A stretch of DNA of 64,000 nt, from the sequence record NC_061421.1; one strand, given 5' to 3'. Shown one piece after another: positions 2,610 through 20,251 of the stretch; the stretch's first letter is position 1, and the number at the start of each line of letters is the position of its first letter. Position numbers and translations under genes: made by a program. The notes beneath the pieces were generated by a model. The model was given only the letters and a program-made list of their open reading frames with translations, did no database searches and had not been told where the DNA came from.

Positions 2610-3209
2610 CTATTTACCCGTGCGAGTGTTTACCCAGGAAGACAAATGCTTCAGTTTGTCACGATGAGCGAGTAGCTTGCTCCAGCTTTTCTCGGGTTTG
2701 TTGGTGGAATCTCCAACTACCCTTTGATAGGCGTAGACGATTTGATCGTAAGAAACTTCAGCCGGCATCCCGCCAGTGGCCGTACAGAAGAGAGGCATGA
2801 CAACCTCAGAAATTTTCCTGTCGGGTGTCATCTTATTGAAATAAACAATTTGACAGAATGCAGCGAGGGCCACACGGTAAGCGATATCTTTTTCTTTTGC
2901 GGGGCTAGGAAAACGCATAGTCGGCGCGTAGCACAGCTGTAGATTACCGCCTAAAGAAACAGTAATAGCTTGGCCCACCGGCATTTCTTTACCCCAGAAA
3001 CGCTCGATAGCAAATTGTACTGCATCTTGAGAATCGGGAAATTTATTCGCTATAACTTTGTCGAAGCCGCCATCCATGATCCCGAATGAATTACCTGGCG
3101 TAATAACGCAGTCGTAATCTTTTCCCGGGATCAGCGCATTAAAGTCGCCTTTCTGGTAATGTTGGCGGGGTGAAAGATTTACTCTGTCAACGATCTTTAG
3201 ATTAAACAT
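2610..3209 (-). CDS. Macrodomain (ADP-ribose / Appr-1''-p processing) protein
   Basis: KGD, TPGNSFGIMDGGFD, PTMRFP and P.F.TATGG motifs. Confidence 0.88.
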   Translation of the reverse strand: MFNLKIVDRVNLSPRQHYQKGDFNALIPGKDYDCVITPGNSFGIMDGGFDKVIANKFPDSQDAVQFAIERFWGKEMPVGQAITVSLGGNLQLCYAPTMRFPSPAKEKDIAYRVALAAFCQIVYFNKMTPDRKISEVVMPLFCTATGGMPAEVSYDQIVYAYQRVVGDSTNKPEKSWSKLLAHRDKLKHLSSWVNTRTGK

Positions 3210-3213
3210 TTTA

Positions 3214-3699
3214 TTACCTTCCTAGATTAAAGAGTGATTGTAAAGGGCTCAGTAATGGTTTCTTGTAGTTTCGATAGACGATCTCGATTGATAACTTTGC
3301 TCCGGATTTGGAGGTCAAAAGAAGTACATCTGAAATGTATCGGGTTTTCAGGAGCTTCTTCTTCTGATAAATCTCAAGAACTTTCTCGGCTTTCTCGTCG
3401 ATAAGGTAATCGCTATCTAGCCTTACTCGAATTTCTTTCAGTGCATTAGTTCGAATCGCAAGTTGAAAGTCGATAGAGAGTCGAGGCGCTGTCACCTTGA
3501 CAGACCCTTTCTCCCCGATACCGTTCTTCAACTTCTCATGGAAAGCAACGCTGGCTGATTTGTCCCGTAAATATTCGGTGACTTCGTCTATCGTCTTGGA
3601 GATAACAGCGATCAGTGCGATCTCTAGACTTTGGGGTTCTTCTTCCACCGGTTCTTCAAGTGATTGAAACAATTTAGCAAGTGGGTCGGCTGAGGTCAT
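3214..3699 (-). CDS. Hypothetical protein (161 aa)
   Basis: RBS (GGAG) and tight packing. Confidence 0.7.
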   Translation of the reverse strand: MTSADPLAKLFQSLEEPVEEEPQSLEIALIAVISKTIDEVTEYLRDKSASVAFHEKLKNGIGEKGSVKVTAPRLSIDFQLAIRTNALKEIRVRLDSDYLIDEKAEKVLEIYQKKKLLKTRYISDVLLLTSKSGAKLSIEIVYRNYKKPLLSPLQSLFNLGR

Positions 3700-3722
3700 T
3701 TTTTACTCCTACTTTTATCAGA

Positions 3723-4133
3723 TCAAATCCAACGATCGTTAGGGCGAATAAAGGTTTGGAAAACGCCGTACCACCAACCGTCGTCTTTCAAAACGGGTTG
3801 GAAGTAGGCAGAACGCCGCATTGACCCGACCTGATTTTTCCCTGCAGCAATAATATTCTTGTACCAAATAGTGCGTAGTACTGCACTAGGAAGCTGGAAT
3901 TTCCCGCCCACTAAAGGACGGTCGTAATTTTCCCCTACACGAAAACGAAACCTACCATTGTTAGGCTCGTATTCAAAGTCGATAGTATTGTTTTCCCCCT
4001 CTTCTAATCCCCAGAGAAATGTCTTTGATAATGAACAGTCCGAATCGCGCGACAGTCGAATGTAAGGTACTGTATAGACTTGCTCACGCGGAGTAGAGGT
4101 AGTGGGAGTATATGGTATCTTGATAAAAGGCAT
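3723..4133 (-). CDS. Hypothetical protein, paralog of 1636..2031
   Basis: Shared motifs MPF.K, IDFE, FRFRVG, DGW. Confidence 0.75.
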   Translation of the reverse strand: MPFIKIPYTPTTSTPREQVYTVPYIRLSRDSDCSLSKTFLWGLEEGENNTIDFEYEPNNGRFRFRVGENYDRPLVGGKFQLPSAVLRTIWYKNIIAAGKNQVGSMRRSAYFQPVLKDDGWWYGVFQTFIRPNDRWI

Positions 4134-4163
4134 GTAATTCTCCTTGACTAAAAAATAAAAGAA

Positions 4164-4187
4164 TAGAGGGGAATTAATTCCCCTCTA
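4164..4187 (-). terminator. Terminator-like perfect 24-bp palindrome
   Basis: TAGAGGGGAATT-AATTCCCCTCTA with A-tract on the left (U-tract on minus). Confidence 0.75.
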
Positions 4188-4192
4188 CGTTA

Positions 4193-4555
4193 TTAGCAGA
4201 CGATCGAATCAACGAACAGTGCGGTATTGCTGCGAGTCGGCTGAATTTGCTTTTCGATGGTCGGGAAGAATTTACCGGCGGCGTTAATGAAAAGAAACGC
4301 GGTGTCTTTCTCGCCGCGACCTACTTTTTCGGCCGATAGAACACTAACCGGGAAAGGAACAACTTTGACTTTATCAATCACTGCCGGACCAAGGTAAAGC
4401 TCGATCATTTCCGCAAACTTTTTACGGGTCGCTGGATCACCGTAAACTTTAATTGTTTTCCCTTTTACCAGGTTATTGAGAATGAACGCTGCGTAGTGAA
4501 GCAGCGCTGTATTGTTGAAAGTACCTGTAACGCGGATCGATTGAATTCGTTTCAT
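4193..4555 (-). CDS. Hypothetical protein
   Basis: ATGA overlap with upstream stop at 4552-4555. Confidence 0.7.
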   Translation of the reverse strand: MKRIQSIRVTGTFNNTALLHYAAFILNNLVKGKTIKVYGDPATRKKFAEMIELYLGPAVIDKVKVVPFPVSVLSAEKVGRGEKDTAFLFINAAGKFFPTIEKQIQPTRSNTALFVDSIVC

Positions 4556-5109
4556 TTCGTGAACACCCAATAAACACTGTAGAAGTTGATCGCATGAATA
4601 CCGGAAGAGAGGGTATCAAGTTCCCCTAGGTCATCAGGGTCAATAAGGTTGACCTTTAACCCTGTCGCCAACAAACGTTTCAGATTGTAAGCCACGGCTG
4701 TCTGAGGAATCCGAAACGTAATCGCTTGTTGGTTTCTGAAGTGACTAACCAAATCGCGAGGGGCATCACCTAAACGTTCTAGATACTTAGCGAACGTTTC
4801 GCCATCTAACCCGTCTAACGACCACTGCCAAACGACACCGTCTGCCGCAACGACAGCCACTCCTTTATAACGATACGGTTTTTGGTATTCTCCCCATTTG
4901 ATACTCTCTGGCTGATAGCAAGAATTGTAATCTGTGATCCTCAGTTCTTCGCCAGGTTCTGCTTCATCGACCATTTCAGCAAAAGCGGGAAGGAGAATAG
5001 TCTCACCGGCAGCGTTTTTAGCATGGGCGACAATTTCACCCTCAGTGAGCCCATAAGCATCAGCTGCGTAAACCCCACGTTCAAACTTCAATTTTATCTG
5101 CTGAGTCAT
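4552..5109 (-). CDS. Hypothetical protein (185 aa)
   Basis: Coupled to kptA stop by 4-nt overlap. Confidence 0.7.
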   Translation of the reverse strand: MTQQIKLKFERGVYAADAYGLTEGEIVAHAKNAAGETILLPAFAEMVDEAEPGEELRITDYNSCYQPESIKWGEYQKPYRYKGVAVVAADGVVWQWSLDGLDGETFAKYLERLGDAPRDLVSHFRNQQAITFRIPQTAVAYNLKRLLATGLKVNLIDPDDLGELDTLSSGIHAINFYSVYWVFTK

Positions 5110-5675
5110 TCTTTCTTTTCCTCTATTTTAAAACAGCCAACCGGAACGTGCCTGACTAACCAGACCCCGTTCAACGCTTTGTAGAACACGTAGCCGAGCT
5201 CAATTAATTTCTCGGCATCTACGCTCAGTACCACGAGAGAGCCTTTCTTAGCGTACCGTAAACCCACTAACCGCGCCGTCTCAATGTGATCGGTCAAATG
5301 GACAAACTGACGAGATTGCGGATTGAGTCCGTTCTCAAAAATGCTCTCTAAGTTACCCGATGCGGTACCGTGGTACAAAACCCTAGGAGGGGTCTCTTTG
5401 CTAAAAGACATTTCATTCACTGGGAAAGAATGCCCTTGTACCGCTCTGATTGCCGAAAGGTCTTTGGAAAGACTGAATCGTTTCTTGTCGTCTGTTTCAA
5501 CGACGTACATTAACTCCTCTAAACTGACCTCTTTTTTCTGCTCACTGAAAGCAGCAATAAGATCGTCGAGTTTTACATATCCAAATTCGTCCGGCGTTAA
5601 TTTCAATGCCTGAGGGCGATGACGTAAAACAAAACAGAGCGTTTTAGACAGTTTAATGGGGTCATTCATTAGCAT
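5106..5675 (-). CDS. kptA: RNA 2'-phosphotransferase (Tpt1/KptA family)
   Basis: SK.L..VLRH.P, IRAVQGHS, LYHGT and SRQFVHL motifs. Confidence 0.93.
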   Translation of the reverse strand: MLMNDPIKLSKTLCFVLRHRPQALKLTPDEFGYVKLDDLIAAFSEQKKEVSLEELMYVVETDDKKRFSLSKDLSAIRAVQGHSFPVNEMSFSKETPPRVLYHGTASGNLESIFENGLNPQSRQFVHLTDHIETARLVGLRYAKKGSLVVLSVDAEKLIELGYVFYKALNGVWLVRHVPVGCFKIEEKKE

Positions 5676-6180
5676 GAATACTCTTGTTAATGTAAATATT
5701 CCACCCCGGACTCACCCATACTGGAATTTTAAAACCTAAATGGTCTTCTTCTCGATAACCCCAATCTTCCCTTTTAGTAAATGAAAAGAAACGATCGCGA
5801 TCCGCTCTCAACTTATCGTAATAGGCAAACATTTTGTGATCAATTGCCTCTGCTTTATATTTCGCATAGAGCCATTTGCGATACTGCGCTTCCATTTCAT
5901 TGTATTCCACCGGCTCATACCCAGAAAGAATCGTCACACCACCAGTAACATTTTCGGGGTAGCACTGGAGTCCATCCCAAATAGCGGGAAGGGGGATAAA
6001 GTCACCCAGTTCCCAAATATCGAACATGGGTGTCAGAACAGAGCGTGGCTCATCCGGGCAAACACTGAATGTTGCGTTACGGAAAGCGGCTTCTTTATCT
6101 TCAGCGGCAATTAATAACACCGTCGCTTCTTTAGACTCAGGAAGATCGTAAAACTTCTCACTTGCCAGAAAAAGTTTCAT
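5662..6180 (-). CDS. Hypothetical protein (172 aa)
   Basis: Overlapping co-oriented ORF. Confidence 0.7.
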   Translation of the reverse strand: MKLFLASEKFYDLPESKEATVLLIAAEDKEAAFRNATFSVCPDEPRSVLTPMFDIWELGDFIPLPAIWDGLQCYPENVTGGVTILSGYEPVEYNEMEAQYRKWLYAKYKAEAIDHKMFAYYDKLRADRDRFFSFTKREDWGYREEDHLGFKIPVWVSPGWNIYINKSIHANE

Positions 6181-6455
6181 TATCGTTCCCCTATTGCGCC
6201 TAGTTCAGTTTTAACCCAACTAAAACAATATTTCCCTTCGTACTGTGTATTCATGAGCGCCTTAGGAGTGGTTTTGGTAGGATCAAAAACACAGACGAAG
6301 ATACGATTGAAACGTTCTTCTCCCTTGTAGATAAATAACCCCTCGCGATTAAAAACTGCGGATACGAACCCTGGTAAAGTTTTAAGAAATTCTAATGCCT
6401 TTTCTTGGTCTTTTTTAAGGTTCCCTGTTGAAAATTCCACATTAATTACTTTCAT
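6180..6455 (-). CDS. Hypothetical protein (91 aa)
   Basis: Coupled to neighbours. Confidence 0.65.
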   Translation of the reverse strand: MKVINVEFSTGNLKKDQEKALEFLKTLPGFVSAVFNREGLFIYKGEERFNRIFVCVFDPTKTTPKALMNTQYEGKYCFSWVKTELGAIGER

Positions 6456-7161
6456 TATTATTCCCCTGTGCAGTTAGACCAAAATAATGACATTTACCTT
6501 GCGCAGCAACTCGGTATTTCTTTGCGTGCGCTGCACCAAGCGCAGTGTAAAACTTGAGATTGCTGATGTAGTCAATATTCCTTTCCGTAAACTCTTCACG
6601 TGTCTGCCCGAACCGAATACCGATCTCTTGGTACAACCCGTTAAAGATATCTTCATCGAGATAAGACATTGCGTAAAGTTGATCGGCGTCCCGAATAATG
6701 CCGAATAAATAACGCATACCGGTACCACCGGGATACTGCGGAAAAGGGTCGTCGAAGTTATAATGCGTGAATCCAACTAATAAAGTGATCATCGCTTTAT
6801 TAGCCGTAGGAAACTCACACCAGAAACCTAATTGCTCAAGTTGCTGTAAAGCGTGCTCGATATTTTTCCAGTCATCTTTCTCTCCCAAATGACAGAAATC
6901 GTGAACTAACCCTGCAATGACGGCTGATTCAAAATCCTTCTCAGAGAGTCCGTAATTTGATGGCTCAAGATTAGAAAGAAGATAACTTGTTAATACACCA
7001 ACGCCAATTAAATGGTGCGTAGAATGATAAGGGCGGTCGACGTTGTGTTTTTCCACCCACTGCATCATTTTACCGTATCGATTAAAGAATTGTCGTCCCC
7101 AGATAGGGTTAAACTCTTCTAACGAATACGCTTCCCAGAAGTTTGAAAATTCACTATTCAT
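6442..7161 (-). CDS. HD-domain metal-dependent phosphohydrolase
   Basis: PYHSTHH, AGLVHDFCH and IRDAD motifs. Confidence 0.85.
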   Translation of the reverse strand: MNSEFSNFWEAYSLEEFNPIWGRQFFNRYGKMMQWVEKHNVDRPYHSTHHLIGVGVLTSYLLSNLEPSNYGLSEKDFESAVIAGLVHDFCHLGEKDDWKNIEHALQQLEQLGFWCEFPTANKAMITLLVGFTHYNFDDPFPQYPGGTGMRYLFGIIRDADQLYAMSYLDEDIFNGLYQEIGIRFGQTREEFTERNIDYISNLKFYTALGAAHAKKYRVAAQGKCHYFGLTAQGNNNESN

Positions 7162-7867
7162 TGCTAACCTCGTAGTAAGCCATATTGACCGCCTTTAACG
7201 TTTTAACGATCATTTCAGAATCAAATATGGTTTGGTTCCAGTTACGGTGAGTGGCGACGTAGAATTCGTGTTCCTCGGGCGTAAACTCAATATAGAAGCT
7301 GTGGTCAGCATCAACAAGGGCGGAAATTTTATTAGTGGCAGCACAGTAGAGAACTTTAGTACCCGCTAACTCAGAAATACGTTTAAGTTTATCCGGGTTA
7401 ATTAAAGGGTGTGCTAAAAACGACTCTACTGTCCCCTTAAACGGGAGAATATTCATTTCGCCGTTAGAGGAGTCCGTCGGTCCCAGGTATTTCCTCACCG
7501 CAATCTGACAATATTCTTCGACCTGATTACAATATACTTCCATCAACTCTTTCGGAACTTCGAAGAGTTTTTTCTCCAGGCGGTCGATTAATCCATTTGT
7601 CATAATCTCGTCGTTGCGAATCAAGACCATCGGAAACCATTTCTGCAATAAACAGAAGAATCGAGGGTCCACTCCATGATTCGTTAAATAACTAACGAAC
7701 TCGGTGGTTCCAATACCTGCTATCCAACCAAAAGGTTTATTAGTACCGGGAGGGATAAAGTCTTCGTCTGACCAAAAAGCGCGAAGATAATGTTGATCGC
7801 GACTGAGAGCCTGAACAAAGAAAGTAAATTCTGGTTTAAGATTTAAGAAACGTTCGATGAGCTGCAT
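7154..7867 (-). CDS. Hypothetical protein (237 aa)
   Basis: Coupled ORF. Confidence 0.7.
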   Translation of the reverse strand: MQLIERFLNLKPEFTFFVQALSRDQHYLRAFWSDEDFIPPGTNKPFGWIAGIGTTEFVSYLTNHGVDPRFFCLLQKWFPMVLIRNDEIMTNGLIDRLEKKLFEVPKELMEVYCNQVEEYCQIAVRKYLGPTDSSNGEMNILPFKGTVESFLAHPLINPDKLKRISELAGTKVLYCAATNKISALVDADHSFYIEFTPEEHEFYVATHRNWNQTIFDSEMIVKTLKAVNMAYYEVSNE

Positions 7868-8355
7868 TAGTTATTCTCCAGATGGATACGAATTTTAAAA
7901 TCAACAAACGGTGTAATCTCTTGTCCATTGAGTAAGAGGGGCGTGGTGTAGTCAGTTATTATTCTAAACGCCCGTAACTCAAAACCAATGATTATGGTGA
8001 AATCAACCACCACACCTTCTCTGAATACAGAGAATGTTTCTCTAGGAACATTCCCTAACCCAGTACTACGGAGAATCATCTCGTTAGTACTTACGAATGT
8101 TGTAGTGATAGGTGAGTCGCTTTCCGGGTCTTTCCATAAACGACTCACCGAAAGGACTTCGATACTGGTAATTCTCTTGTTGTCTGGAACAATATTTTTC
8201 AGTTTGTGGATGCGGTCGTCTGAGATCGTTAAATCGAAGAAAGGGACATCAGCATTTTCAAGTTTTGGGTCGTTCAATAACCTTTGAGTTTCCTTTACTT
8301 TAGCACTATCGCTGAGATTACTAGCCATGATTCTTCGAATATCGTCAAGTAACAT
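7867..8355 (-). CDS. Hypothetical early protein (162 aa)
   Basis: AAGGAG RBS; first gene after promoter motif at 8388. Confidence 0.75.
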   Translation of the reverse strand: MLLDDIRRIMASNLSDSAKVKETQRLLNDPKLENADVPFFDLTISDDRIHKLKNIVPDNKRITSIEVLSVSRLWKDPESDSPITTTFVSTNEMILRSTGLGNVPRETFSVFREGVVVDFTIIIGFELRAFRIITDYTTPLLLNGQEITPFVDFKIRIHLENN

Positions 8356-8387
8356 TTTGTTCTCCTTTAATTTTCCTCTACATCTAA

Positions 8388-13000: not shown

Positions 13001-13028
13001 AAAAGGAGAGGCGAAAGCCTCTCCTTTT
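13001..13028. terminator. Intrinsic terminator hairpin
   Basis: AAAAGGAGAGGC-gaaa-GCCTCTCCTTTT. Confidence 0.85.
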
Positions 13029-14299: not shown

Positions 14300-14989
14300 T
14301 CATTTATTGGTTTTGGTGATATACCATTTCCAAAGACCGTAGAACGCGTTCATCAAGAACACCGCCCATTGCGCAACCTGCGCCCATGAACCCGGTTGAT
14401 TAAGCGCCGGGATCACCCACAGATAAATCGTGACGCAGTTGATAATGATCCAGAGAATCCATTGCTCTGGCTGCTGCTTGATCATCATCCACATGGCGAT
14501 GAGCGATGCGACTAAGCAGAATGCGTCTAAGGCAGGAAACGGATCCTGCGTCGTTTTCAGGTATTCGGTCAGGCCATACCAGAAGATAACCCCAACAACC
14601 AGATATGTTATCACGTCACGTAAAGTGATCGTTTTAACCGCTACGTCAGCTTTGGCTGGAGTTTTGCCCAGGTCTTTCGTCCAGTAATAAATACCGATAA
14701 ACTGCATGGGAAGGTAAATAGCGTTCAACGCCGCATTCGCGTAGAGTCCGGTATTGTACGAAACAATACCGTAGGTAATTACACCAACGGTTCCCCAGTA
14801 GTAATTGGAGACACGACCTTTCGCTACCAGAATAACGCAGATCACGTTAGTCAGCGCCGCCGTAAATTCAAGTGGGCTGGCGCTCCAGCTACCAGCGCCC
14901 ACTAAGATCAACGCAATGATCAGCCAAAGGTATTCGACTTTCTTCCAGTGCGCAAAGTCAGTGAACGTTTTCAATACAAGTGTATTCAT
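14300..14989 (-). CDS. pnuC: Nicotinamide riboside transporter PnuC
   Basis: About 7 TM segments; V.LVAKG..SNY.WG, YLPMQFIGIYYW, PALDAF...S.IAM, EQWILWI..N motifs. Confidence 0.93.
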   Translation of the reverse strand: MNTLVLKTFTDFAHWKKVEYLWLIIALILVGAGSWSASPLEFTAALTNVICVILVAKGRVSNYYWGTVGVITYGIVSYNTGLYANAALNAIYLPMQFIGIYYWTKDLGKTPAKADVAVKTITLRDVITYLVVGVIFWYGLTEYLKTTQDPFPALDAFCLVASLIAMWMMIKQQPEQWILWIIINCVTIYLWVIPALNQPGSWAQVAQWAVFLMNAFYGLWKWYITKTNK

Positions 14990-15138
14990 TTTGTGCTCGC
15001 TCGTTGATAGTTGAGAAAAATGGAAATATAACCTGCGCTATGAATATTGAGGTTATCGCCGAACATAGCGCGATAAAGGGGATAACTGTCTCCCAGTATC
15101 CTCTTTATTTTACGTTGCGTACGACGTTGATGGGTCAT
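14986..15138 (-). CDS. Small basic protein (50 aa) between nadR and pnuC
   Basis: GAGGAG RBS before MTHQRR; stop overlaps pnuC ATG (ATGA). Confidence 0.6.
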   Translation of the reverse strand: MTHQRRTQRKIKRILGDSYPLYRAMFGDNLNIHSAGYISIFLNYQRASTK

Positions 15139-15151
15139 GTATCTATTCTCC

Positions 15152-16366
15152 TCAATCAGAAGACTTATGGTGACAGCGATCTTCGACACTATCTACCATC
15201 GCCTGAATCAAAGTAGTAATCGATCCGTCAGAAGGCGCGGTTTGGAACTTACCGGGCTCATCTTTCCGTACTGCGTCCCACCCCAGGAACCCTTCGTTAA
15301 ATGCCAGTAATTGATCTACGGCCGCACGGGCTTGATCTAAACGGCCTTTGTACGAGTCGCCAGTAATAAATACCGTACGCCCCCGAGGAGTTTGGTTTTT
15401 AAACTCCAGGAGCATTTGTTGGAATAACCCGTCAGTTTTCTCTCGATCCGGATTTAAACGCAAGCCGTCATCGACCCACGGGACTTCAGGAGACAGTATC
15501 AGAACGAGGTCGTAGTGTTCTTCGGCTGCGATGGCGGAGACGATAGGGTTAGGTTTACCTTCGTACAGACGATGGTAATACTCCGTGACGAAAGCGTTAG
15601 TATCGACGAAACAAAGTCGATTAGAGGTTCGTAACGCTTCCTCCTCCAACTCTTTGTGACGATACGCAATCAACGGGTAGTCAGAACTACGCAGTGTTAA
15701 CTCAGAGCCCGCTAAGACGGTTTCACAGTACGTACGGCCGTACTCTTCTACCCAGCTGGTGTTGTAGAGTTTAGCGAGGTTCTTGACGAGATTTGATTTA
15801 CCCGCGCTCTCGACACCCATGACGACAACCCGCAGACAATAGTCCTTACGGACAATACTGGGGAGATATTCCCAGTTGGCGTAAAGGTTATCACGTACTT
15901 TAGTGGCCGAGATAGGAACACGAGTACGTTCACTGTCAACGATGACGTGCTCAACAAAACCGAGGTGAGTTTTGTATTTCTCATCGTAATCCAGTTCGCT
16001 ACTGAAGATTGCGATAGATTGAGCTTGGCTGTGTTTAGCAGCCAGTTTCCCGGCCTCGCTGAAAATCTTTGCCCCTAATAAAGCGGCGTATTCCTGCCAG
16101 CCGTTAGGATATTCCGGCACCGAAGCTTCGTCGATGAAATCGATCGTAACGTGTTCGGTATCGGCGTAGGTTTGTTGCAACCAGCGCAGACGGTTTTTGA
16201 AGTTCAACACCTGCTGATCGCGGGGAGATTGTTTGTCCAACCAACGTTGGTCGTGAGATAATACCACGAGGACGTGTTTCGATTGGACAGCAGCTTCTGT
16301 AATTAGGTTGATGTGCCCCAAAGTCAGGGGTGCAAACTTACCGATGACGACGCCTAAATCAAACAT
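15152..16366 (-). CDS. nadR: NadR-type NMN adenylyltransferase / ribosylnicotinamide kinase without HTH
   Basis: GKFAPLTLGH (HIGH-like), ISATKVR, Walker A GVESAGKS, EYGR, FVDTNA, PWVDDGLR. Confidence 0.93.
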   Translation of the reverse strand: MFDLGVVIGKFAPLTLGHINLITEAAVQSKHVLVVLSHDQRWLDKQSPRDQQVLNFKNRLRWLQQTYADTEHVTIDFIDEASVPEYPNGWQEYAALLGAKIFSEAGKLAAKHSQAQSIAIFSSELDYDEKYKTHLGFVEHVIVDSERTRVPISATKVRDNLYANWEYLPSIVRKDYCLRVVVMGVESAGKSNLVKNLAKLYNTSWVEEYGRTYCETVLAGSELTLRSSDYPLIAYRHKELEEEALRTSNRLCFVDTNAFVTEYYHRLYEGKPNPIVSAIAAEEHYDLVLILSPEVPWVDDGLRLNPDREKTDGLFQQMLLEFKNQTPRGRTVFITGDSYKGRLDQARAAVDQLLAFNEGFLGWDAVRKDEPGKFQTAPSDGSITTLIQAMVDSVEDRCHHKSSD

Positions 16367-16385
16367 TGACTTTCACCTCTTAAAC

Positions 16386-16697
16386 TCAAGCGAAATGATG
16401 ATACAAACGATGTAAGTGGTAACCTTTGTAGTTCATCGCGGTGAAGCCTTGTTCGTTCTTTACCACGACTTTGGCTGCGTAATCCTCCATCAAAAGGAAA
16501 TCGCGCCCTGACTTAGAAAGAATATCTCCATCATAAACCGGACCATCAACAATCAACTGATTCATGGTGCCGATGACATGCCCGACATCTTTGCGTTCGA
16601 GTAACATCGTCACGGTTTTCTCTAACTCGGCCGCGTACGCCAGATCGCTTTCTTCTTCGTTATCAAGATTGCAGATTTCGATAATGGTGTTCAACAT
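16386..16697 (-). CDS. Hypothetical protein (103 aa)
   Basis: GAGG RBS; GPVYDGDILSK motif. Confidence 0.7.
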   Translation of the reverse strand: MLNTIIEICNLDNEEESDLAYAAELEKTVTMLLERKDVGHVIGTMNQLIVDGPVYDGDILSKSGRDFLLMEDYAAKVVVKNEQGFTAMNYKGYHLHRLYHHFA

Positions 16698-16709
16698 TTT
16701 CTTTTCCTC

Positions 16710-17105
16710 TTATTCTTCAGTCCAGGGATGAATTTCCCAGTTACGTACTTTATACTTACGATTCTCAAATTGTCGGCTACGAATGTAAACATCGACCTTG
16801 AGGCTGGTTGCGGTTGGCACTAAAAATATAACGAGATGCGCAGGTTCATTTTGATAAACTTCCGCAATTGAAACAAACGCAGAGAAAGGGAGCGATTGCT
16901 TTTCTGCACGCCGGAAGTTATCGTACAGTAGTCGCACTGCGCGGCGAGCGAACAGTTGATCATGGTACCAGCTATGCCGAATACTTTTCCTTCCTGTCTT
17001 TAATTTCAAAAAGAACAGGCGTTTTTCCGCCCAAGGTAAAAGATAACCTACTCCCGTGAGTGCACCTGACCAGAACACCCACGATAGCGTTTTAAATAAA
17101 CCCAT
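16710..17105 (-). CDS. Membrane-anchored hypothetical protein
   Basis: N-terminal hydrophobic segment; GGAG RBS. Confidence 0.7.
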   Translation of the reverse strand: MGLFKTLSWVFWSGALTGVGYLLPWAEKRLFFLKLKTGRKSIRHSWYHDQLFARRAVRLLYDNFRRAEKQSLPFSAFVSIAEVYQNEPAHLVIFLVPTATSLKVDVYIRSRQFENRKYKVRNWEIHPWTEE

Positions 17106-17113
17106 AATTCTCC

Positions 17114-17347
17114 TTAATTAACGGGCGGTTTCTTGAAAGGATTATAGATATTCAGATACCAGATTAACCCCACGAAGATACCGATACAGATAAAAGGCCA
17201 TGCGATACCGATCGTCAGCACCTTCCACATTTTCATCCGTAAAACTACCCGACGATATTTTGGATTAACAATAGGTTTCCAAACGATCATCAGGAAAACC
17301 GCCAACCAAATAGCGCCGCCAGAAAAAGCGAGTATTGCGAGGTCCAT
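17114..17347 (-). CDS. Two-TM small membrane protein
   Basis: Two hydrophobic helices; GGAGGAG RBS. Confidence 0.75.
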   Translation of the reverse strand: MDLAILAFSGGAIWLAVFLMIVWKPIVNPKYRRVVLRMKMWKVLTIGIAWPFICIGIFVGLIWYLNIYNPFKKPPVN

Positions 17348-17356
17348 TTTCTCCTC

Positions 17357-17917
17357 CTAAAATGTATTGTTATTTGACGTCCAGTTTTTGTCTTCTGGGA
17401 ATTCAACGCCAACAAAAACTTCACTGACTAATGCTGGGATTATTTTAATTAAATCTTTTTCAATATTTTCCCAATGGGCGCAGTGTATAGCATGAAGTTT
17501 TTTGTAAGCAAGGCCACCCGAATTTGTCTTGATAATATTCAGTTCTTCTACTAAATCCCTGATCGGACAAATGTCGAACCATCCCTTTTTCGCACAGCGG
17601 TCAAACTCAAGTATTTCTTTTCGCGCTATGGTCCTTCTAAAGATATCGTCGCCTGGATCTGGCCAAGAAATGGCGCGGGTAATGGGGTGAAGATCGCGGA
17701 AAGTATCGATTGTTTTAAGGAAGAGTTCCTGGGATTTGTTCTTCCTGTTATTGACCCCTTGAAATGCGTTAATCGGTTTTTCGTCGTATTGAAGTAATGC
17801 GACTTGGTTGACCGGTTCTGTTTGTTCAGTCACCGGGCGAGAATTTACCGGGGGCGCAAGAAACAACTCCTTATCTTTTCCCGTTGCGATAACCACACCA
17901 AAAATTTTAATTAGCAT
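17357..17917 (-). CDS. Hypothetical protein with FDIC..LHAIHC motif
   Basis: 186-aa packed ORF. Confidence 0.7.
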   Translation of the reverse strand: MLIKIFGVVIATGKDKELFLAPPVNSRPVTEQTEPVNQVALLQYDEKPINAFQGVNNRKNKSQELFLKTIDTFRDLHPITRAISWPDPGDDIFRRTIARKEILEFDRCAKKGWFDICPIRDLVEELNIIKTNSGGLAYKKLHAIHCAHWENIEKDLIKIIPALVSEVFVGVEFPEDKNWTSNNNTF

Positions 17918-18178
17918 TTATAACCCCTTTACTGAGAATTGCTTTAAACCATGACGATAATGAACCCGACTCTTAAGTCTACCACCCAAATCAACACATC
18001 GACGAAAACGTGCGTTTAACAGCGCCCTTCCGCAACGCCTCCCGCCAAAAAACTGAAATCCGGAATCAATCCCGTCAATATACTGTTTACCGATTTTAAT
18101 CAGAAACAAATGGTTTTTAGTAATCGAACTTCGTTTCAGTAAAGACCTTTGCTGCTTTAAACATTTCTTCAATGCCAT
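17918..18178 (-). CDS. Small very basic protein (86 aa)
   Basis: GGAGG RBS before MALKK at 18178; the ORF-track start at 18307 overlaps another gene. Confidence 0.6.
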   Translation of the reverse strand: MALKKCLKQQRSLLKRSSITKNHLFLIKIGKQYIDGIDSGFQFFGGRRCGRALLNARFRRCVDLGGRLKSRVHYRHGLKQFSVKGL

Positions 18179-18188
18179 ATTTCCCTCC

Positions 18189-18314
18189 TTATTCCAAGGA
18201 ATTATAGAGCTTCTTACAGATTGCAAAGAATACCCTGAGAATAGCGCCGGAGATATACCACGCGCCGCCGTAACAAACAATGACAAAAATAAGAATTTTC
18301 CATTCAACGGGCAT
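18189..18314 (-). CDS. Single-TM micropeptide (41 aa)
   Basis: GGAGG RBS before MPVEWKILIFV. Confidence 0.6.
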   Translation of the reverse strand: MPVEWKILIFVIVCYGGAWYISGAILRVFFAICKKLYNSLE

Positions 18315-18347
18315 ATTACACCTCCGGTATTTAAGAAATAAAATAAA

Positions 18348-18375
18348 GAGAGGGAGGGAATTTTCCCTCCCTCTC
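18348..18375 (-). terminator. Intrinsic terminator hairpin
   Basis: GAGAGGGAGGGAA-tt-TTCCCTCCCTCTC with A-tract on the left. Confidence 0.8.
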
Positions 18376-18378
18376 CGG

Positions 18379-19014
18379 TCAGTATAAGTTTTCTGAGTAC
18401 AACTCGTCGTTAATGATAACAACATCGGGGCGCGTTGCGTTAATCTGCCCAGCGTGTTTCGCGATGATAAAGGCGTCTTCGCGATTCCAATAACGATCCC
18501 ATTGGTCGATAAAGCCTTGTCCTTCACCGTGCGGGAATTTAATCTCCGGTTCACCTGCTAGTTTCCGCAGACGCTTTATTTCGTCACCGATAAGGTGTTG
18601 AAGATTACTACCGTGGCGAGCGGAAGGGATAACGAGTTTTTCAACAGGTTTCATTCCACGTCCTTCCTGTAGAACTTCCCGCGTATTTACCTCACCCCAG
18701 ACATTAGCGGCAGAGACAATCCGAACCTGAACAAAAACCCCGGGTGAAGGTTCATGGACGCAGATCGCAGGAAGAGCAGATCTTTGTTCTTCCGATAGTA
18801 CCTCATTACCAGAATAACCTTTCTCTTTACGGAAATGAGATTCCGCAGTCTGTACTGAGGCTAGAATATCCTTTGCGAACGCTCGCGCTTCTTCGATGGT
18901 ATAATCCCGACCGTTCAGAAGCCCGCCAACATTAATGACTTTGTCCTCTTCAGTATCGTAATCGCGTACCGTTACTGAAGAGTAATCTCCCCGATGAGAA
19001 AGGTGAATGGTCAT
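18379..19014 (-). CDS. Hypothetical protein, C-terminal RH..QGFID..R..A..AGQ..LYSE domain
   Basis: Motif string resembles a conserved phage family of unknown function. Confidence 0.75.
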   Translation of the reverse strand: MTIHLSHRGDYSSVTVRDYDTEEDKVINVGGLLNGRDYTIEEARAFAKDILASVQTAESHFRKEKGYSGNEVLSEEQRSALPAICVHEPSPGVFVQVRIVSAANVWGEVNTREVLQEGRGMKPVEKLVIPSARHGSNLQHLIGDEIKRLRKLAGEPEIKFPHGEGQGFIDQWDRYWNREDAFIIAKHAGQINATRPDVVIINDELYSENLY

Positions 19015-19304
19015 TTTTTATTTACCTCGCGGGTCAGTTGCCGAAAACTGAGTCTTTGCCCCAGTTTGATCGTACGGATGGGGAGTTCGATCGAACCGCA
19101 GGCGTTAGCCACAATCGTTCCCGTTGGTGTCCCTACGACCGCGGTGAACTCATCGGGTTCTTTTTCGATTAAGTTAGATGCGGCCAAAAAGAGTGCGTCA
19201 TTGCTCGCCATCAGGCGCAATTCGGACTCATTAATGATATCGCCGATATACGGATATTTTGTGTCCCCAATCGGCTGAGTTTTACTGACCTTTTTAGCGA
19301 TCAT
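19011..19304 (-). CDS. Hypothetical protein (97 aa)
   Basis: 4-nt overlaps at both ends. Confidence 0.7.
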   Translation of the reverse strand: MIAKKVSKTQPIGDTKYPYIGDIINESELRLMASNDALFLAASNLIEKEPDEFTAVVGTPTGTIVANACGSIELPIRTIKLGQRLSFRQLTREVNKK

Positions 19305-19735
19305 TCTTTACCTCCGTCAATGACAGAGAACGGATTGGCTTTTTTCATCGGGGTAACGTTGTCCGTCGAAGTTACTGGATCAACTTCTTCTTTCCCTGTG
19401 ATCACAGGGTACGGCAGCGCTAAATTCTGGTCGCTGGTATCCGGGTTGAGGACAACGCGTACTTTATCCCATGAAAAGGTGTCGCTGGCTAATTTACCGC
19501 CGAATCGACCCTCGAAAAACAACCCTTCATCAAAAGATTGTAGCTGGCAGGAATGCGGAGAAATGTTGAGTACTAAATACTCGTACCCCTCGACGTCGGG
19601 TGTGGGTTTAATAAAGCTCCGTAAAATGGGGTTAGTACTGATACATTTACCATTAAGGGCAATAAAAATTCGGTTCCCTTGATCACAGTGCCATTTATAA
19701 GCTGCGTCGAAAAGTGCTTTGTTCAGTGAGGACAT
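19301..19735 (-). CDS. sspB: SspB-like ClpXP adaptor
   Basis: A.Y.W..D, LVLNISP, F.GRFGG matching SspB (IVLNIAP..FNARFGG); disordered tail ending FSVIDGGKE. Confidence 0.75.
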   Translation of the reverse strand: MSSLNKALFDAAYKWHCDQGNRIFIALNGKCISTNPILRSFIKPTPDVEGYEYLVLNISPHSCQLQSFDEGLFFEGRFGGKLASDTFSWDKVRVVLNPDTSDQNLALPYPVITGKEEVDPVTSTDNVTPMKKANPFSVIDGGKE

Positions 19736-19759
19736 TTGATTCTCCTTGGATTGGTTTCA

Positions 19760-20251
19760 TTAGGGTGATATAGTCTTCAAAATGCTTCGAGTTTCTTCCC
19801 AGAATTGGACTAACCATTCCCCACTCTTAGGCGTCACTACTTTGACGTTGTCTTCCCAAACCCTCGCGCCCTTCTCCATTCGCCAGTCCCCAAAAACGTA
19901 GTAGTGCGTAAAGGGTAATTCTGACGCAATAAGCGCGTTGTATTGGTGGCGGTAAGCGTTGAGTTTTGCGAGATTGGCAGATTTAATAATCGAGAGAAAA
20001 TCTGGGTGCTGAATAATCTCTAATTTCTTACCGAACGCTTTGGCTTCATTCCCCCACAATCCGCGAAGGTATTGATGTTTGAAGCCTGTTTTCGCGTAGT
20101 ACCAAAACCCCTCCATACTTTCAAAGTTTCCGTATTCGGGATGCTCAAATGGCGTGCGAGGAAAATGCGAAAGAAAGAAGCCCAGTCGGTTCTTTGACTT
20201 GGAATAAATGTTGATGTGGTCGATGCCATCATTGTTTGGGTCGAAAGTCAT
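19760..20251 (-). CDS. NADAR-like (T4 30.3-type) protein
   Basis: DGIDHINIYSK, LSHF..TPF, F.SMEGFWYYAK, G.EAK..GK, K.N.AKL, final N-less W motif; recognised by memory only. Confidence 0.55.
   Translation of the reverse strand: MTFDPNNDGIDHINIYSKSKNRLGFFLSHFPRTPFEHPEYGNFESMEGFWYYAKTGFKHQYLRGLWGNEAKAFGKKLEIIQHPDFLSIIKSANLAKLNAYRHQYNALIASELPFTHYYVFGDWRMEKGARVWEDNVKVVTPKSGEWLVQFWEETRSILKTISP
19765..19782 (-). promoter_or_regulatory. Putative early promoter embedded in the 3' end of the upstream gene
   Basis: Minus strand TTTTGAAGACTATATCAC, 30 nt upstream of sspB-like ATG. Confidence 0.65.

What the first reader, a model, noticed from the sequence alone, without database searches (positions are those of the whole stretch)
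2610..20251. Dispersed NAD+/ADP-ribose toolkit of five genes in the early region
Macrodomain (2610), Tpt1 (5106), PnuC (14300), NadR (15152) and a NADAR-like gene (19760) all lie within 18 kb. Established: many antiphage systems deplete NAD+ (SIR2/TIR types) or ADP-ribosylate DNA (DarT; reversed by macrodomain DarG for thymidine and NADAR for guanine). Inference: a phage shielded from DNA-cutting defences by a nucleus would still face NAD-based abortive defences, and this may be a coordinated counter-defence kit covering supply (PnuC/NadR) and both eraser chemistries.
Basis: inference. Interest (0 to 1): 0.7.

Follow-up and report, generated by a model that had tools for sequence, protein, structure and literature searches.

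The report
Phage NAD and ADP-ribose gene set
A giant nucleus-forming Klebsiella phage really does carry five NAD+/ADP-ribose genes within 18 kb, but they look like three separate modules of already described kinds (NAD+ salvage, a DNA de-ADP-ribosylase, and the remains of an RNA-repair set), not one coordinated kit.

Summary
The window is Klebsiella phage vB_KpM_FBKp24 (phiKp24), record positions 186001-250000. All five genes are real and sit at the stated coordinates.

- **NadR and PnuC.** NadR matches the crystallised NARP3 enzyme Bas30_86 at E = 3.6e-141. PnuC lies next to it. Together they are a new copy of the published NARP3 NAD+ salvage module.
- **gp125.** This is a divergent NADAR of the phage (gp30.3/AdfN) type. 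Only fold and profile comparisons show this.
- **Tpt1.** It is a full-length RNA 2'-phosphotransferase.
- **The window macrodomain (gp159).** It is not the DarG/AdfM-type thymine eraser. It lacks the catalytic lysine, and its best structural and sequence match is the yeast ADP-ribose-1''-phosphatase. It stays syntenic with Tpt1, an HD hydrolase, RlaP and an RNA ligase in sister lineages.
- **The real AdfM orthologue.** This is gp348, about 130 kb away. A third macrodomain and a NARP1-like pair also lie outside the window.

The five genes sit in four terminator-delimited units. The clustering is not beyond chance once the accessory arm is taken into account. All five occur together only in this clade, and the closest relative lacks the macrodomain. 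Each component is a new member of a known kind. The "coordinated kit" idea is only partly supported.

The parts
15152..16366 (-). NadR-like bifunctional NMN adenylyltransferase / ribosylnicotinamide kinase without the HTH domain (404 aa). This is the NARP3 enzyme.
   Evidence: PF13521 and PF01467 hit. The match to PRK08099 covers only positions 65-407, so the HTH is missing. PDB 9X6F/9X6H (Bas30_86) matches at E = 3.6e-141 over residues 2-358, with the nucleotidyltransferase motif and the P-loop aligned. It is 60% identical to the NadR of T5-like phages.
14300..14989 (-). PnuC-type nicotinamide riboside transporter (229 aa). This is the NARP3 transporter.
   Evidence: PF04973 at E = 2.5e-43. 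TIGR01528 scores 121.8 bits against a cut-off of 42.45. It is 45% identical to the PnuC that lies next to NadR in T5-like phages.
14986..15138 (-). Small 50-aa ORF between NadR and PnuC. This spacer varies among relatives.
   Evidence: Annotated CDS. Centimanus has a 157-aa ORF at this place. KpLz-2_45 has none.
19760..20251 (-). gp125, a divergent NADAR of the phage (gp30.3/AdfN-like) type (163 aa). Predicted guanine-ADP-ribose glycohydrolase.
   Evidence: The AF2 model has pLDDT 96.4. The top three Foldseek hits are YbiA 2b3w, NADAR 8bau and NADAR 8bat. The profile hits 8bau at E = 0.013 with the catalytic Glu aligned. hhalign against T4-type gp30.3 gives probability 90% and E = 1.7e-6. E47 and H116 are invariant in 32 relatives.
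5106..5669 (-). gp154, Tpt1/KptA RNA 2'-phosphotransferase (187 aa; the ORF extends to 5675).
   Evidence: PF01885 scores 145 bits over the full length. PDB 7kw8 matches at 8.7e-41. R16, H17, R75 and R120 are invariant in 5 diverged phage copies.
2610..3209 (-). gp159, a macrodomain of the Macro_2 / yeast ADP-ribose-1''-phosphatase type (199 aa). RefSeq mis-labels it 'tail protein'.
   Evidence: See for the family assignment. The DarG 'PTK' lysine position is an invariant Met98 followed by Arg99. The gene is absent from Centimanus. It is syntenic with Tpt1 in two sister lineages.
5662..7161 (-). HD-type phosphohydrolase (239 aa), a 91-aa ORF, and a 172-aa orphan protein whose end overlaps the start of Tpt1. 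The HD and 172-aa parts form one 398-aa protein in a sister lineage.
   Evidence: Weak PDEase_I hit at E = 0.0035. phrog_16069 'phosphohydrolase' at 3e-22. The 398-aa protein of L015 matches both parts, at 4e-41 and 1e-29. The 172-aa part has only 7 representative relatives in 1.8 billion proteins.
18347..18376 (-). Strong terminator-like hairpin (13 pairs plus a T run) that separates the NADAR unit from the NadR-PnuC unit.
13001..13028 (-). Terminator, also annotated in the record, that separates the NadR-PnuC unit from the unit ending with Tpt1.
4163..4188 (-). Terminator-like hairpin (11 pairs) that separates the Tpt1 unit from the macrodomain unit.
2589..2601 (-). Short terminator-like hairpin directly after the macrodomain gene.

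Best explanation
The five genes are genuine. They form three functionally separable modules in a conserved accessory arm of a nucleus-forming jumbo phage (tail fibres - dUTPase - ... - thymidylate synthase).

(1) NadR and PnuC are a copy of NARP3. PnuC imports nicotinamide riboside, and NadR phosphorylates and adenylates it to NAD+. This refills the pool when SIR2-, TIR- or DSR-type defences burn NAD+. The homology is shown here. The activity is inferred from the characterised homologue.

(2) gp125 is a phage-type NADAR that keeps the catalytic Glu and Lys and the phage-typical His. Like AdfN, it most likely removes ADP-ribose from guanine in DNA modified by DarT1-type toxins. The fold and residues are shown here. 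The substrate is inferred.

(3) Tpt1, the Macro_2 macrodomain, the HD hydrolase and its 172-aa partner are what remains of an NAD+-dependent RNA end-healing set. Tpt1 transfers an RNA 2'-phosphate onto NAD+. The macrodomain then clears the ADP-ribose-phosphate by-product. The synteny with RlaP and an RNA ligase in sister lineages is shown here. The chemistry is inferred from the yeast pathway.

The thymine-ADP-ribose eraser of this phage is a different gene, gp348, outside the window. The NAD+ supply arm is doubled by a NARP1-like pair, also outside the window.
For: NARP3:
- NadR matches Bas30_86 (PDB 9X6F/9X6H) at E = 3.6e-141.
- It lacks the HTH, as Bas30_86 does.
- PnuC passes the equivalog cut-off.
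- The NadR-then-PnuC order and orientation match T5-like phages.

NADAR:
-.
- Papers state that phage NADARs carry His in place of the Glu/Asp (PMC11543638; PMC11125620).
- AdfN counters DarTG1 (PMC11825919).

RNA-repair reading:
- In contig SRR23468752 the order is HD - RlaP - x - x - Tpt1 - x - x - Macro_2 - x - RNA ligase.
- In contig SRR33317146 the order is Macro_2 - ... - NadR - PnuC - x - RlaP - x - x - x - Tpt1.
- The best solved relative of gp159 is the yeast ADP-ribose-1''-phosphatase.
- RtcB is also in the genome and lies next to Tpt1 in one unrelated viral contig.

The window macrodomain is not AdfM.

Separate units: four minus-strand terminator-like hairpins.

Modularity:
- Centimanus lacks the macrodomain but keeps the other four at 90-100% identity.
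- NARP3 is absent from the same stretch in SRR23468752.
Against: - No activity was measured for any of the five proteins.
- gp125 fails every curated NADAR or gp30.3 model on its own. Its Lys54 column is not invariant in the family.
- T4 AdfN did not rescue DarT1 toxicity in uninfected cells, so fold alone does not guarantee the role.
- phiKp24 itself has no homologue of the RNA ligase or RlaP found in sister lineages. RtcB ligation leaves no 2'-phosphate. The Tpt1 branch therefore has no evident substrate source in this genome.
- By fold, gp159 is about as close to DarG as to the yeast phosphatase, and Arg99 might replace the missing Lys.
- In sister contig SRR33317146 all five families again lie within 15.9 kb. 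Selection for linkage therefore cannot be excluded.
Confidence: 0.6

Rival explanations
1. The five genes act as one coordinated counter-defence kit: PnuC and NadR supply NAD+, the macrodomain erases thymine-ADP-ribose (DarT2), and the NADAR erases guanine-ADP-ribose (DarT1). The kit would be selected as a set in a phage whose nucleus already blocks DNA-cutting defences.
For: - All five families are present in 17.6 kb on one strand.
- The same five are kept in the same order in Siatvirus KpLz-2_45. They lie within 15.9 kb, in another order, in contig SRR33317146.
- The whole-genome clustering p is about 0.005.
- The nucleus alone does not protect chimalliviruses from DarTG2, and chimalliviruses do carry a macrodomain eraser (PMC13309987).
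- By fold, gp159 is close to DarG.
Against: - The gp159 family has Met where DarG and AdfM have the catalytic Lys.
- The AdfM orthologue is gp348, elsewhere in the genome.
- PhiPA3 keeps both types as separate genes.
- The genes lie in four terminator-delimited units.
- Centimanus lacks the macrodomain.
- Clustering is not significant within the accessory arm (p 0.11-0.17).
- Outside the clade, none of 18 other Tpt1-bearing viral contigs has Macro_2, NADAR, NadR or PnuC within 10 kb.
- The complete list of Macro_2 phage hits and the sampled list of Tpt1 phage hits overlap only in this clade and in one uncultured phage.
- This reading gives Tpt1 no role.
Confidence: 0.12
2. Housekeeping reading. 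The NAD+ salvage genes mainly feed the phage's own NAD+-consuming reactions (Tpt1 and possibly others) and boost host metabolism for a large burst. Counter-defence would be incidental.
For: - Tpt1 consumes one NAD+ per 2'-phosphate removed. This is established Tpt1 chemistry, summarised in PMC9503650.
- In contig SRR33317146, NadR and PnuC are embedded between Macro_2 and RlaP/Tpt1.
- NAD+ synthesis clusters are common in jumbo phages and have been read as independent metabolism (PMC11662467).
Against: - The nearest characterised homologue pair restores phage growth on Sir2-HerA and DSR1 strains, and both genes are needed.
- The genome also carries a NARP1-like pair, which rebuilds NAD+ from ADPR and nicotinamide, the products of defence NADases.
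- No NAD+-dependent DNA ligase is annotated anywhere in the genome.
- SRR23468752 keeps Tpt1 and the macrodomain without NARP3 nearby.
Confidence: 0.15
3. Soluble-metabolite reading. gp159, and perhaps gp125, act on free ADP-ribose derivatives rather than on nucleic acids. Candidate substrates are ADPR-1''-phosphate and ADPR cyclic phosphate, which arise from Tpt1 and from the decay of the NARP1 intermediate ADPR-PP, or ADPR-based immune signals. The products would return as ADPR to the NARP1-like pair.
For: - The best solved relative of gp159 is an ADP-ribose-1''-phosphatase.
- ADPR cyclic phosphate is reported as a spontaneous product of ADPR-PP in NARP1.
- A different macrodomain type (gp170-like) lies within 6 kb of Adps/Namat in 16 of 79 viral contigs. 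In two of these, and in Vibrio phage K460, it lies between them.
- Iyer et al. proposed that viral Macro and NADAR domains prefer soluble ADPr derivatives.
Against: - The NARP1-linked macrodomain is the gp170 type, not the gp159 type. No Macro_2 was found near any of the 79 Adps loci.
- In phiKp24 neither macrodomain is adjacent to the NARP1-like pair.
- Every phage NADAR tested so far acts on guanine-ADPr DNA.
Confidence: 0.15

Closest known systems
NARP3 (Bas30_86 NadR-like enzyme plus Bas30_87 PnuC of Escherichia phage TrudiRoth; Sci Adv 2026, PMC13464706)
   Same: It is the same two families in the same order and orientation. NadR lacks the HTH and matches the crystallised enzyme at E = 3.6e-141. 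Identity to the T5-like phage copies is about 60% for NadR and 45% for PnuC.
   Different: - The host phage is a nucleus-forming jumbo phage, not a T5-like siphovirus.
- A 50-aa ORF separates the two genes.
- NadR is 404 aa against 357 aa for Bas30_86, and the alignment stops at residue 358 with a short gap near residue 103.
- The paper counted only about one Klebsiella phage among its 124 operons.
AdfN / phage gp30.3-type NADAR (T4 gp30.3; Nat Commun 2025, PMC11825919)
   Same: It has the YbiA/NADAR fold. The Glu and Lys align with the catalytic E36/K43 of T4 AdfN. An invariant His fits the phage-NADAR signature. It is a stand-alone small protein.
   Different: - It is too diverged for Pfam NADAR or Phage_30_3 to recognise gp125 itself.
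- It belongs to a distinct family of about 520 phage records (PHROG 652), mostly unannotated and sometimes labelled 'N-glycosidase' or 'YbiA'.
- No activity has been tested.
AdfM (PhiKZ gp104 / PhiPA3 gp108; DarG2-like macrodomain of chimalliviruses; Cell Rep 2026, PMC13309987)
   Same: It is a macrodomain fold in a chimallivirus, with the conserved Asn and Gly-Gly ADP-ribose-binding loop.
   Different: - gp159 is not the orthologue. BLASTP against PhiPA3 AdfM aligns only 39 residues.
- The catalytic Lys position is Met.
- PhiPA3 has a separate gp159-like gene, gp271.
- The orthologue in phiKp24 is gp348 (E = 1e-21 against PhiPA3 AdfM, 5e-20 against DarG 5m3i, Lys kept) at record 56891-57337.
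Yeast tRNA-splicing by-product pathway (Tpt1, then a cyclic phosphodiesterase, then the ADP-ribose-1''-phosphatases Poa1/YMR087W) and the KptA-2H-Macro RNA-repair sets described in jumbo phages (Iyer et al. 2022, PMC9503650)
   Same: Tpt1 and a macrodomain whose nearest solved relative is YMR087W (1njr) lie close together. In sister lineages they sit beside RlaP and an RNA ligase.
   Different: - No 2H phosphoesterase was found. An HD hydrolase may stand in for it.
- phiKp24 has lost, or never had, the ATP-type RNA ligase and RlaP.
- Its only recognisable RNA ligase is RtcB, about 15 kb from Tpt1, outside the window.
NARP1 (Adps plus Namat; Osterman et al., bioRxiv 10.1101/2024.02.11.579819)
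   Same: Outside the window, gp219 (Prs-like) and gp220 (Nampt-like) overlap by 4 nt. This is the arrangement that defines NARP1. 1556 phage records hold a gp219 homologue, one of them annotated as ADP-ribose pyrophosphate synthetase.
   Different: - The pair is not part of the finding's window.
- Membership of the Adps clade, as opposed to true Prs, was not tested by phylogeny.

Membership tests
NARP3 | NadR-like enzyme with NMNAT and ribosylnicotinamide-kinase domains and no N-terminal HTH | tested here: met
   PF01467 and PF13521 hit. PRK08099 is matched from position 65 onward. The protein aligns with Bas30_86 over residues 2-358.
NARP3 | Close homology to the characterised enzyme Bas30_86 | tested here: met
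   PDB 9X6F/9X6H matches at E = 3.6e-141. The PDB codes are confirmed in the paper.
NARP3 | PnuC-type transporter gene next to NadR on the same strand | tested here: met
   PnuC at 14300-14989 lies downstream of NadR at 15152-16366, with one 50-aa ORF between and no terminator between them.
NARP3 | NR uptake, NR-to-NAD+ conversion, and rescue from NAD+-depleting defence | not testable with these tools
   These are biochemical and genetic properties, known only for the homologue.
NADAR superfamily (phage gp30.3/AdfN type) | YbiA/NADAR fold | tested here: met
   The AF2 model has pLDDT 96.4. The top three Foldseek PDB hits are 2b3w, 8bau and 8bat, with probabilities 1.00, 1.00 and 0.90. The next hits have probability at most 0.06.
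NADAR superfamily (phage gp30.3/AdfN type) | Recognition by the curated family models (Pfam NADAR PF08719 or Phage_30_3 PF08010) | tested here: not met
   gp125 has no hit. Among 32 relatives, 4 touch Phage_30_3 (best E = 9.7e-4) and 1 touches NADAR (E = 0.058).
NADAR superfamily (phage gp30.3/AdfN type) | Catalytic Glu and Lys (E36/K43 of T4 AdfN) | tested here: met
   E47 is invariant and aligns with the Glu of 8bau and of T4-type gp30.3. K54 lies seven residues later, as in AdfN, but its column varies in the family.
NADAR superfamily (phage gp30.3/AdfN type) | Third catalytic residue in the last strand (His in phage NADARs) | tested here: inconclusive
   An invariant H116 sits at the start of a C-terminal strand. 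The hhalign match to gp30.3 stops before it. The rule itself comes from papers.
NADAR superfamily (phage gp30.3/AdfN type) | Hydrolysis of guanine-ADP-ribose on DNA | not testable with these tools
   This is an enzymatic property.
DarG2/AdfM-type macrodomain (thymine-ADPr eraser) | Macrodomain fold with the Asn and Gly-rich ADP-ribose loop | tested here: met
   N40, G47, G48 and D50 are invariant. Macrodomain structures fill the Foldseek list.
DarG2/AdfM-type macrodomain (thymine-ADPr eraser) | Catalytic lysine (K80 of DarG, K78 of AdfM, in the 'PTK' motif) | tested here: not met
   The profile alignment to DarG 5m3i puts invariant Met98 at that place, with Arg99 next to it. hhalign against PhiPA3 AdfM also gives no Lys there.
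DarG2/AdfM-type macrodomain (thymine-ADPr eraser) | Orthology to chimallivirus AdfM | tested here: not met
   gp159 against PhiPA3 gp108 gives E = 0.013 over 39 residues. gp348 against gp108 gives E = 1e-21 and 32% identity. PhiPA3 has its own gp159-like gene, gp271.
Macro_2 / ADP-ribose-1''-phosphatase (YMR087W-like) | Pfam Macro_2 (PF14519) at or above the gathering score | tested here: inconclusive
   gp159 scores 26.4 bits against a cut-off of 27. Ten of its 23 relatives carry a precomputed PF14519 hit, and 7 carry PF01661.
Macro_2 / ADP-ribose-1''-phosphatase (YMR087W-like) | Nearest solved structure is the yeast enzyme | tested here: met
   1njr is the top hit by sequence (E = 1.7e-6), by profile (5e-11) and by fold (3.6e-6). 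DarG is close behind by fold (5.9e-6).
Macro_2 / ADP-ribose-1''-phosphatase (YMR087W-like) | Phosphatase activity on ADP-ribose-1''-phosphate | not testable with these tools
   This is an enzymatic property.
Tpt1/KptA | Full-length PF01885 domain | tested here: met
   It scores 145.3 bits, with profile positions 4-176 of 177 matched.
Tpt1/KptA | Conserved Arg-His-Arg-Arg active-site residues. That these four are the catalytic tetrad is my own knowledge of the Tpt1 literature. | tested here: met
   R16, H17, R75 and R120 are invariant in five phage copies that are 42-87% identical. They align with identical residues of solved Tpt1 7kw8.
Tpt1/KptA | NCBIfam equivalog cut-off | tested here: not met
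   The best model, NF002014, scores 196.7 bits against a cut-off of 239. This is a diverged member.
NARP1 (outside the window) | Prs-like gene directly next to a Nampt-like gene in a phage | tested here: met
   gp219 and gp220 overlap by 4 nt. The rule comes from the paper.
NARP1 (outside the window) | Placement inside the Adps clade rather than among true Prs enzymes | not tested
   No tree was built. One 43%-identical homologue is annotated as ADP-ribose pyrophosphate synthetase.

The most novel reading that the evidence does not exclude
The Tpt1 - Macro_2 - HD (- RlaP - RNA ligase) set and the NAD+ rebuilding pathways may form one closed NAD+ economy. Tpt1 would spend NAD+ to heal RNA ends. 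A macrodomain phosphatase would turn the ADP-ribose-phosphate by-product into ADPR. The same by-product arises by decay of the NARP1 intermediate. NARP1 would then turn ADPR back into NAD+, and NARP3 would top the pool up from outside. On this reading macrodomain phosphatases would be a so far undescribed third component of NARP1-type pathways. Two observations fit it: NARP3 is embedded inside the RNA-repair cluster in one sister lineage, and macrodomains lie beside or inside NARP1 operons in unrelated phages.
Probability: 0.15. Interest if true: 0.6.

Novelty: new member of a known kind. Interest (0 to 1): 0.4.

Why it matters
The analysis shows that one nucleus-forming Klebsiella phage stacks at least five layers directed at NAD+/ADP-ribose chemistry:
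- a NARP3 copy;
- a NARP1-like pair;
- an AdfM-like macrodomain;
- an AdfN-like NADAR;
- a Tpt1/macrodomain set.

This supports the published view that the phage nucleus does not make chimalliviruses immune to NAD-based and ADP-ribosylating defences.

It also corrects annotation. gp159 is labelled 'tail protein', gp125 'hypothetical', and gp348 is the real AdfM orthologue. It places a NARP3 copy in chimalliviruses, a group that the NARP3 paper does not mention as hosts. It flags two testable associations: Tpt1 with Macro_2 and RNA-repair genes, and macrodomains with NARP1. For phage therapy against K. pneumoniae, such gene sets are relevant descriptors of which host defences a phage is likely to tolerate.

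Tried and rejected
- **Other ORFs.** Pfam, PHROGs or NCBIfam were run on 35 other ORFs between 21 and 22176. They added only thymidylate synthase, dUTPase, the HD hydrolase, a 'protease' PHROG and a P-loop fragment. No 2H esterase, PNK, RNA ligase, Nudix, SIR2 or ART was found.
- **Broken RNA ligase.** I suspected that the two overlapping 179-aa ORFs next to the macrodomain were a broken copy of the RNA ligase seen at that place in a sister lineage. BLASTP of each piece separately showed no similarity, and tblastn found no homologue anywhere in the genome. Rejected.
- **gp170 as the AdfM orthologue.** I first took gp170, just outside the window, for the orthologue. Its match to PhiPA3 AdfM is weak, and gp348 is the orthologue.
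- **The 172-aa protein coupled to Tpt1.** The word-based and exhaustive protein searches gave only 8 and 7 relatives, none annotated. Its function stays unknown.
- **Literature.** No paper assigns phage Tpt1 a counter-defence role. Neither phiKp24 paper reports virion proteomics or NAD genes. The AdfN paper's accession table is not held.
- **NADAR next to NARP3 in a T5-like phage.** None was found within the 20 kb examined around NARP3.
- **Full co-occurrence matrix across Chimalliviridae.** This could not be built. Hit lists are capped at 60 rows, and whole genomes cannot be fetched in bulk.

Full report
**Identity of the window.** Bases 2000-21000 are 100% identical to Klebsiella phage vB_KpM_FBKp24 (phiKp24, 307,210 bp, genus Maaswegvirus). 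Window base 1 is record base 186001. The phage was described as encoding a nucleus-shell protein and a PhuZ tubulin (bioRxiv 10.1101/2021.03.02.433402), and both are annotated in the record. That paper does not mention NAD genes.

**The observation.** From 2610 to 20251 there are 35 annotated CDS, all on the minus strand.
- Tpt1, PnuC and NadR are unambiguous, with Pfam E-values of 2.7e-42, 2.5e-43 and 3.4e-30. PnuC passes the TIGR01528 equivalog cut-off. NadR matches PRK08099 only from position 65, so it lacks the HTH.
- The macrodomain call needed more work. Pfam Macro_2 scores 26.4 bits against a cut-off of 27. The yeast ADP-ribose-1''-phosphatase 1njr matches at E = 1.7e-6 for the single sequence and 5e-11 for a 22-sequence profile. 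Relatives carry precomputed Macro_2 or Macro domains. A confident model (pLDDT 92) retrieves macrodomains throughout. RefSeq's label 'tail protein' comes from a PHROG name and is very probably wrong.
- The NADAR-like gene has no hit in Pfam or NCBIfam, and in PHROGs only to families of unknown function. A 32-sequence profile hits the NADAR structures 8bau (E = 0.013) and 8bat (E = 0.97). The AF2 model (pLDDT 96.4) has YbiA, 8bau and 8bat as its only credible Foldseek hits. hhalign against a T4-type gp30.3, taken from Escherichia phage R5505, gives 90% probability and E = 1.7e-6.

**Is the clustering more than chance?** The whole genome carries at least nine NAD/ADP-ribose genes. Besides the five, these are:
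- a DarG-like macrodomain, gp348, at 56.9 kb;
- a Nampt-like and Prs-like pair at 150.6-153.2 kb;
- a TARG1-like macrodomain, gp170, at 182.2 kb.

In a simulation, five of nine genes fall inside 17.7 kb with p about 0.005 genome-wide. Within the roughly 100-kb run of small minus-strand non-structural genes, where eight of the nine lie, p is 0.11. Counting adjacent pairs as one unit, p is 0.17. Four strong minus-strand terminator-like hairpins, one of them also annotated in the record, split the five genes into four units. Only NadR and PnuC share a unit. The 'early region' label could not be tested.

**NadR and PnuC.** NadR matches PDB 9X6F/9X6H at E = 3.6e-141 over residues 2-358, including the nucleotidyltransferase motif and the kinase P-loop. 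These entries are Bas30_86, the NadR-like enzyme of NARP3. In that study the PnuC/NadR pair restored NAD+ and phage growth against Sir2-HerA and DSR1, and both genes were required. T5-like phages carry the pair in the same order, with 60% (NadR) and 45% (PnuC) identity to the window proteins. This is a new copy of a known module. The NARP3 paper does not mention jumbo phages and counted about one Klebsiella phage among its 124 operons.

**The NADAR.**
- Glu47 is invariant and aligns with the catalytic Glu of PnNADAR and of gp30.3.
- Lys54 follows seven residues later, as K43 follows E36 in T4 AdfN.
- An invariant His116 at the head of a C-terminal strand fits the rule that phage NADARs carry His where YbiA has Glu and DarT1-linked NADARs have Asp.
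- The family has about 520 phage records. These include Serratia, Ralstonia, Xanthomonas and Erwinia jumbo phages and many smaller phages. A few are labelled 'N-glycosidase' or 'YbiA'.
- Every phage NADAR tested to date hydrolyses guanine-ADP-ribose and not thymine-ADP-ribose. In vitro activity did not always give protection in cells.

**The macrodomain is not the thymine eraser.**
- Chimallivirus AdfM is PhiKZ gp104 / PhiPA3 gp108, with catalytic N23 and K78.
- gp159 aligns with PhiPA3 gp108 over only 39 residues.
- In the profile alignment to DarG 5m3i, the 'PTK' lysine is replaced by an invariant Met98 followed by Arg99. hhalign also shows no lysine there.
- PhiPA3 holds a separate gp159-like gene, gp271, in addition to AdfM.
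- gp348 of phiKp24 matches PhiPA3 AdfM at E = 1e-21 and DarG at 5e-20, and it keeps the lysine.

At genome level the phage probably does cover both eraser chemistries, but with gp348 rather than the window gene.

**What the macrodomain and Tpt1 look like instead.** Two metagenomic sister lineages, about 50% identical at protein level, keep the same arm (tail fibres - dUTPase - NADAR - ... - thymidylate synthase).
- In contig SRR23468752 the order is HD protein (398 aa) - RlaP - two ORFs - Tpt1 - two ORFs - Macro_2 - one ORF - RNA ligase (PF09414, 26.4 bits). No NadR or PnuC lies in the stretch.
- In contig SRR33317146 the order is NADAR - ... - Macro_2 - ... - NadR - PnuC - one ORF - RlaP - three ORFs - Tpt1, all within 15.9 kb.
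- RlaP and RNA ligase mark RNA-repair systems. The nearest solved relative of gp159 is the enzyme that clears the by-product of Tpt1 in yeast.
- phiKp24 and Siatvirus KpLz-2_45 keep HD, Tpt1 and Macro_2 but have no homologue of that ligase or of RlaP. RtcB lies about 15 kb from Tpt1, outside the window.
- The HD protein of SRR23468752 corresponds to two separate ORFs in phiKp24: the HD hydrolase, and a 172-aa orphan that overlaps the Tpt1 start. The orphan has almost no relatives.

**Co-occurrence.**
- All five families occur together in the 12 other records of the Maaswegvirus/Siatvirus clade, except that Centimanus lacks the macrodomain. Centimanus is the closest relative, at 93.8% DNA identity. 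It keeps Tpt1, PnuC, NadR and NADAR at 98, 97, 90 and 100% identity.
- The gp159-type macrodomain occurs in 47 phage records and Tpt1 in 98. Outside this clade the lists share only one uncultured 462-kb phage.
- Of 18 other Tpt1-bearing IMG/VR contigs, none has Macro_2, NADAR, NadR or PnuC within 10 kb. One has RtcB adjacent, one a gp170-like macrodomain, and one a NARP1 pair.

The set is therefore inherited as part of a conserved arm, with NARP3 moving or missing. It is not a recurrent multi-gene system.

**Comparison with what is known.** The general idea is already in print:
- jumbo phages assemble NAD+/ADP-ribose networks;
- KptA works with Macro, 2H and possibly NADAR in RNA repair;
- NADAR genes sit near NAD+ salvage genes (Iyer et al. 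2022).

NARP1 and NARP2, NARP3, AdfN and AdfM are experimentally described. Each window gene is thus a new member of a known kind.

**Side observation.**
- The gp170-type macrodomain lies within 6 kb of Adps/Namat in 16 of 79 viral contigs. In two of these it lies between the two genes, and the same is true in Vibrio phage K460.
- RNA ligase or PNK genes are near NARP1 in Pseudomonas phage Adele and in roughly a tenth to a sixth of those 79 contigs.
- The NARP1 preprint does not mention macrodomains.
- Together with the ADPR cyclic phosphate reported there, this suggests a recycling role for macrodomain phosphatases. I rate this as possible but unproven.

**Verdict.** Confidence in the modular explanation is about 0.6.

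Noticed in passing
Outside the window: NC_061421.1 56891-57337 (L008:11891-12337, minus strand): gp348 is the real DarG2/AdfM-type macrodomain of this phage. It is 32% identical to PhiPA3 AdfM (E = 1e-21), matches DarG 5m3i at 5e-20, and keeps the catalytic Lys. With gp170 (182173-182646, TARG1/T4 Tk.4-like) and gp159, the genome has three macrodomains of three different types.
   Followed up: yes
Outside the window: NC_061421.1 150591-153208 (L003:14591-17208, minus strand): A Prs-like gene (gp219) overlaps a Nampt-like gene (gp220) by 4 nt. This is the arrangement that defines NARP1 (Adps plus Namat). The phage probably has two NAD+ rebuilding pathways. Clade membership was not tested by a tree.
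   Followed up: partly
L012 (Vibrio phage K460), L011 (Pseudomonas phage Adele), IMG/VR loci L041-L119: A gp170-type macrodomain lies within 6 kb of Adps/Namat in 16 of 79 viral contigs. In two of these and in K460 it lies between the two genes. PNK, RNA ligase or RtcB genes are also frequent neighbours of NARP1. The NARP1 preprint does not mention macrodomains.
   Followed up: partly
window 5662-7161 (minus strand); L015:4685-5881: The HD phosphohydrolase and the 172-aa orphan protein that overlaps the Tpt1 start are separate ORFs here, in Centimanus and in KpLz-2_45. In a sister lineage they are one 398-aa protein. phiKp24 has an extra 91-aa ORF between them. The HD part has a weak cyclic-nucleotide-phosphodiesterase-like match (E = 0.0035).
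   Followed up: partly
window 2610-3209 versus L006 (Centimanus): The closest relative (93.8% DNA identity) has no macrodomain gene at this place. It has two unrelated small ORFs where phiKp24 has three genes. It also lacks the 311-aa ORF at 11667-12602.
   Followed up: partly
window 14300-14989 and 15152-16366: PnuC is 95-99% identical in all 11 other clade records, while NadR is 80-95% and the macrodomain about 69%. The module does not evolve evenly. The small ORF between the two genes is 50 aa here, 157 aa in Centimanus and absent in KpLz-2_45.
   Followed up: no
window 21-1412 (minus strand); L015:16504-18520: The thymidylate synthase is 463 aa, and its Pfam match falls in two stretches, so it holds a large insertion. 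In the sister contig the thymidylate synthase reading frame is in two pieces flanking a homing-endonuclease-like gene (NUMOD3/I-TevI DNA-binding domain).
   Followed up: no
window 14021-14272 (minus strand): An 83-aa ORF directly downstream of PnuC matches only the first 50 or so positions (the P-loop end) of nucleotide-kinase families (AAA_18, cytidylate kinase). It may be a kinase fragment.
   Followed up: no
Outside the window: NC_061421.1 174955-176199; IMG/VR locus L031: The phage encodes a full-length RtcB RNA ligase (PF01139, E = 4e-120). In one unrelated viral contig RtcB lies directly upstream of Tpt1.
   Followed up: partly
L019:13255-13911 (SRR33317146 contig): The sister lineage has a second, weak PnuC-like gene between NADAR and Macro_2, in addition to the NadR-PnuC pair.
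   Followed up: no
window 22276-50600 (record 208276-236600 and beyond): The rest of the window is dominated by the many tail-fibre and depolymerase genes already described for this phage, then virion genes and two RNA polymerase beta-subunit genes. No tRNA gene lies in the window. The nine tRNAs, including the reported suppressor, are at record 41-46 kb.
   Followed up: no
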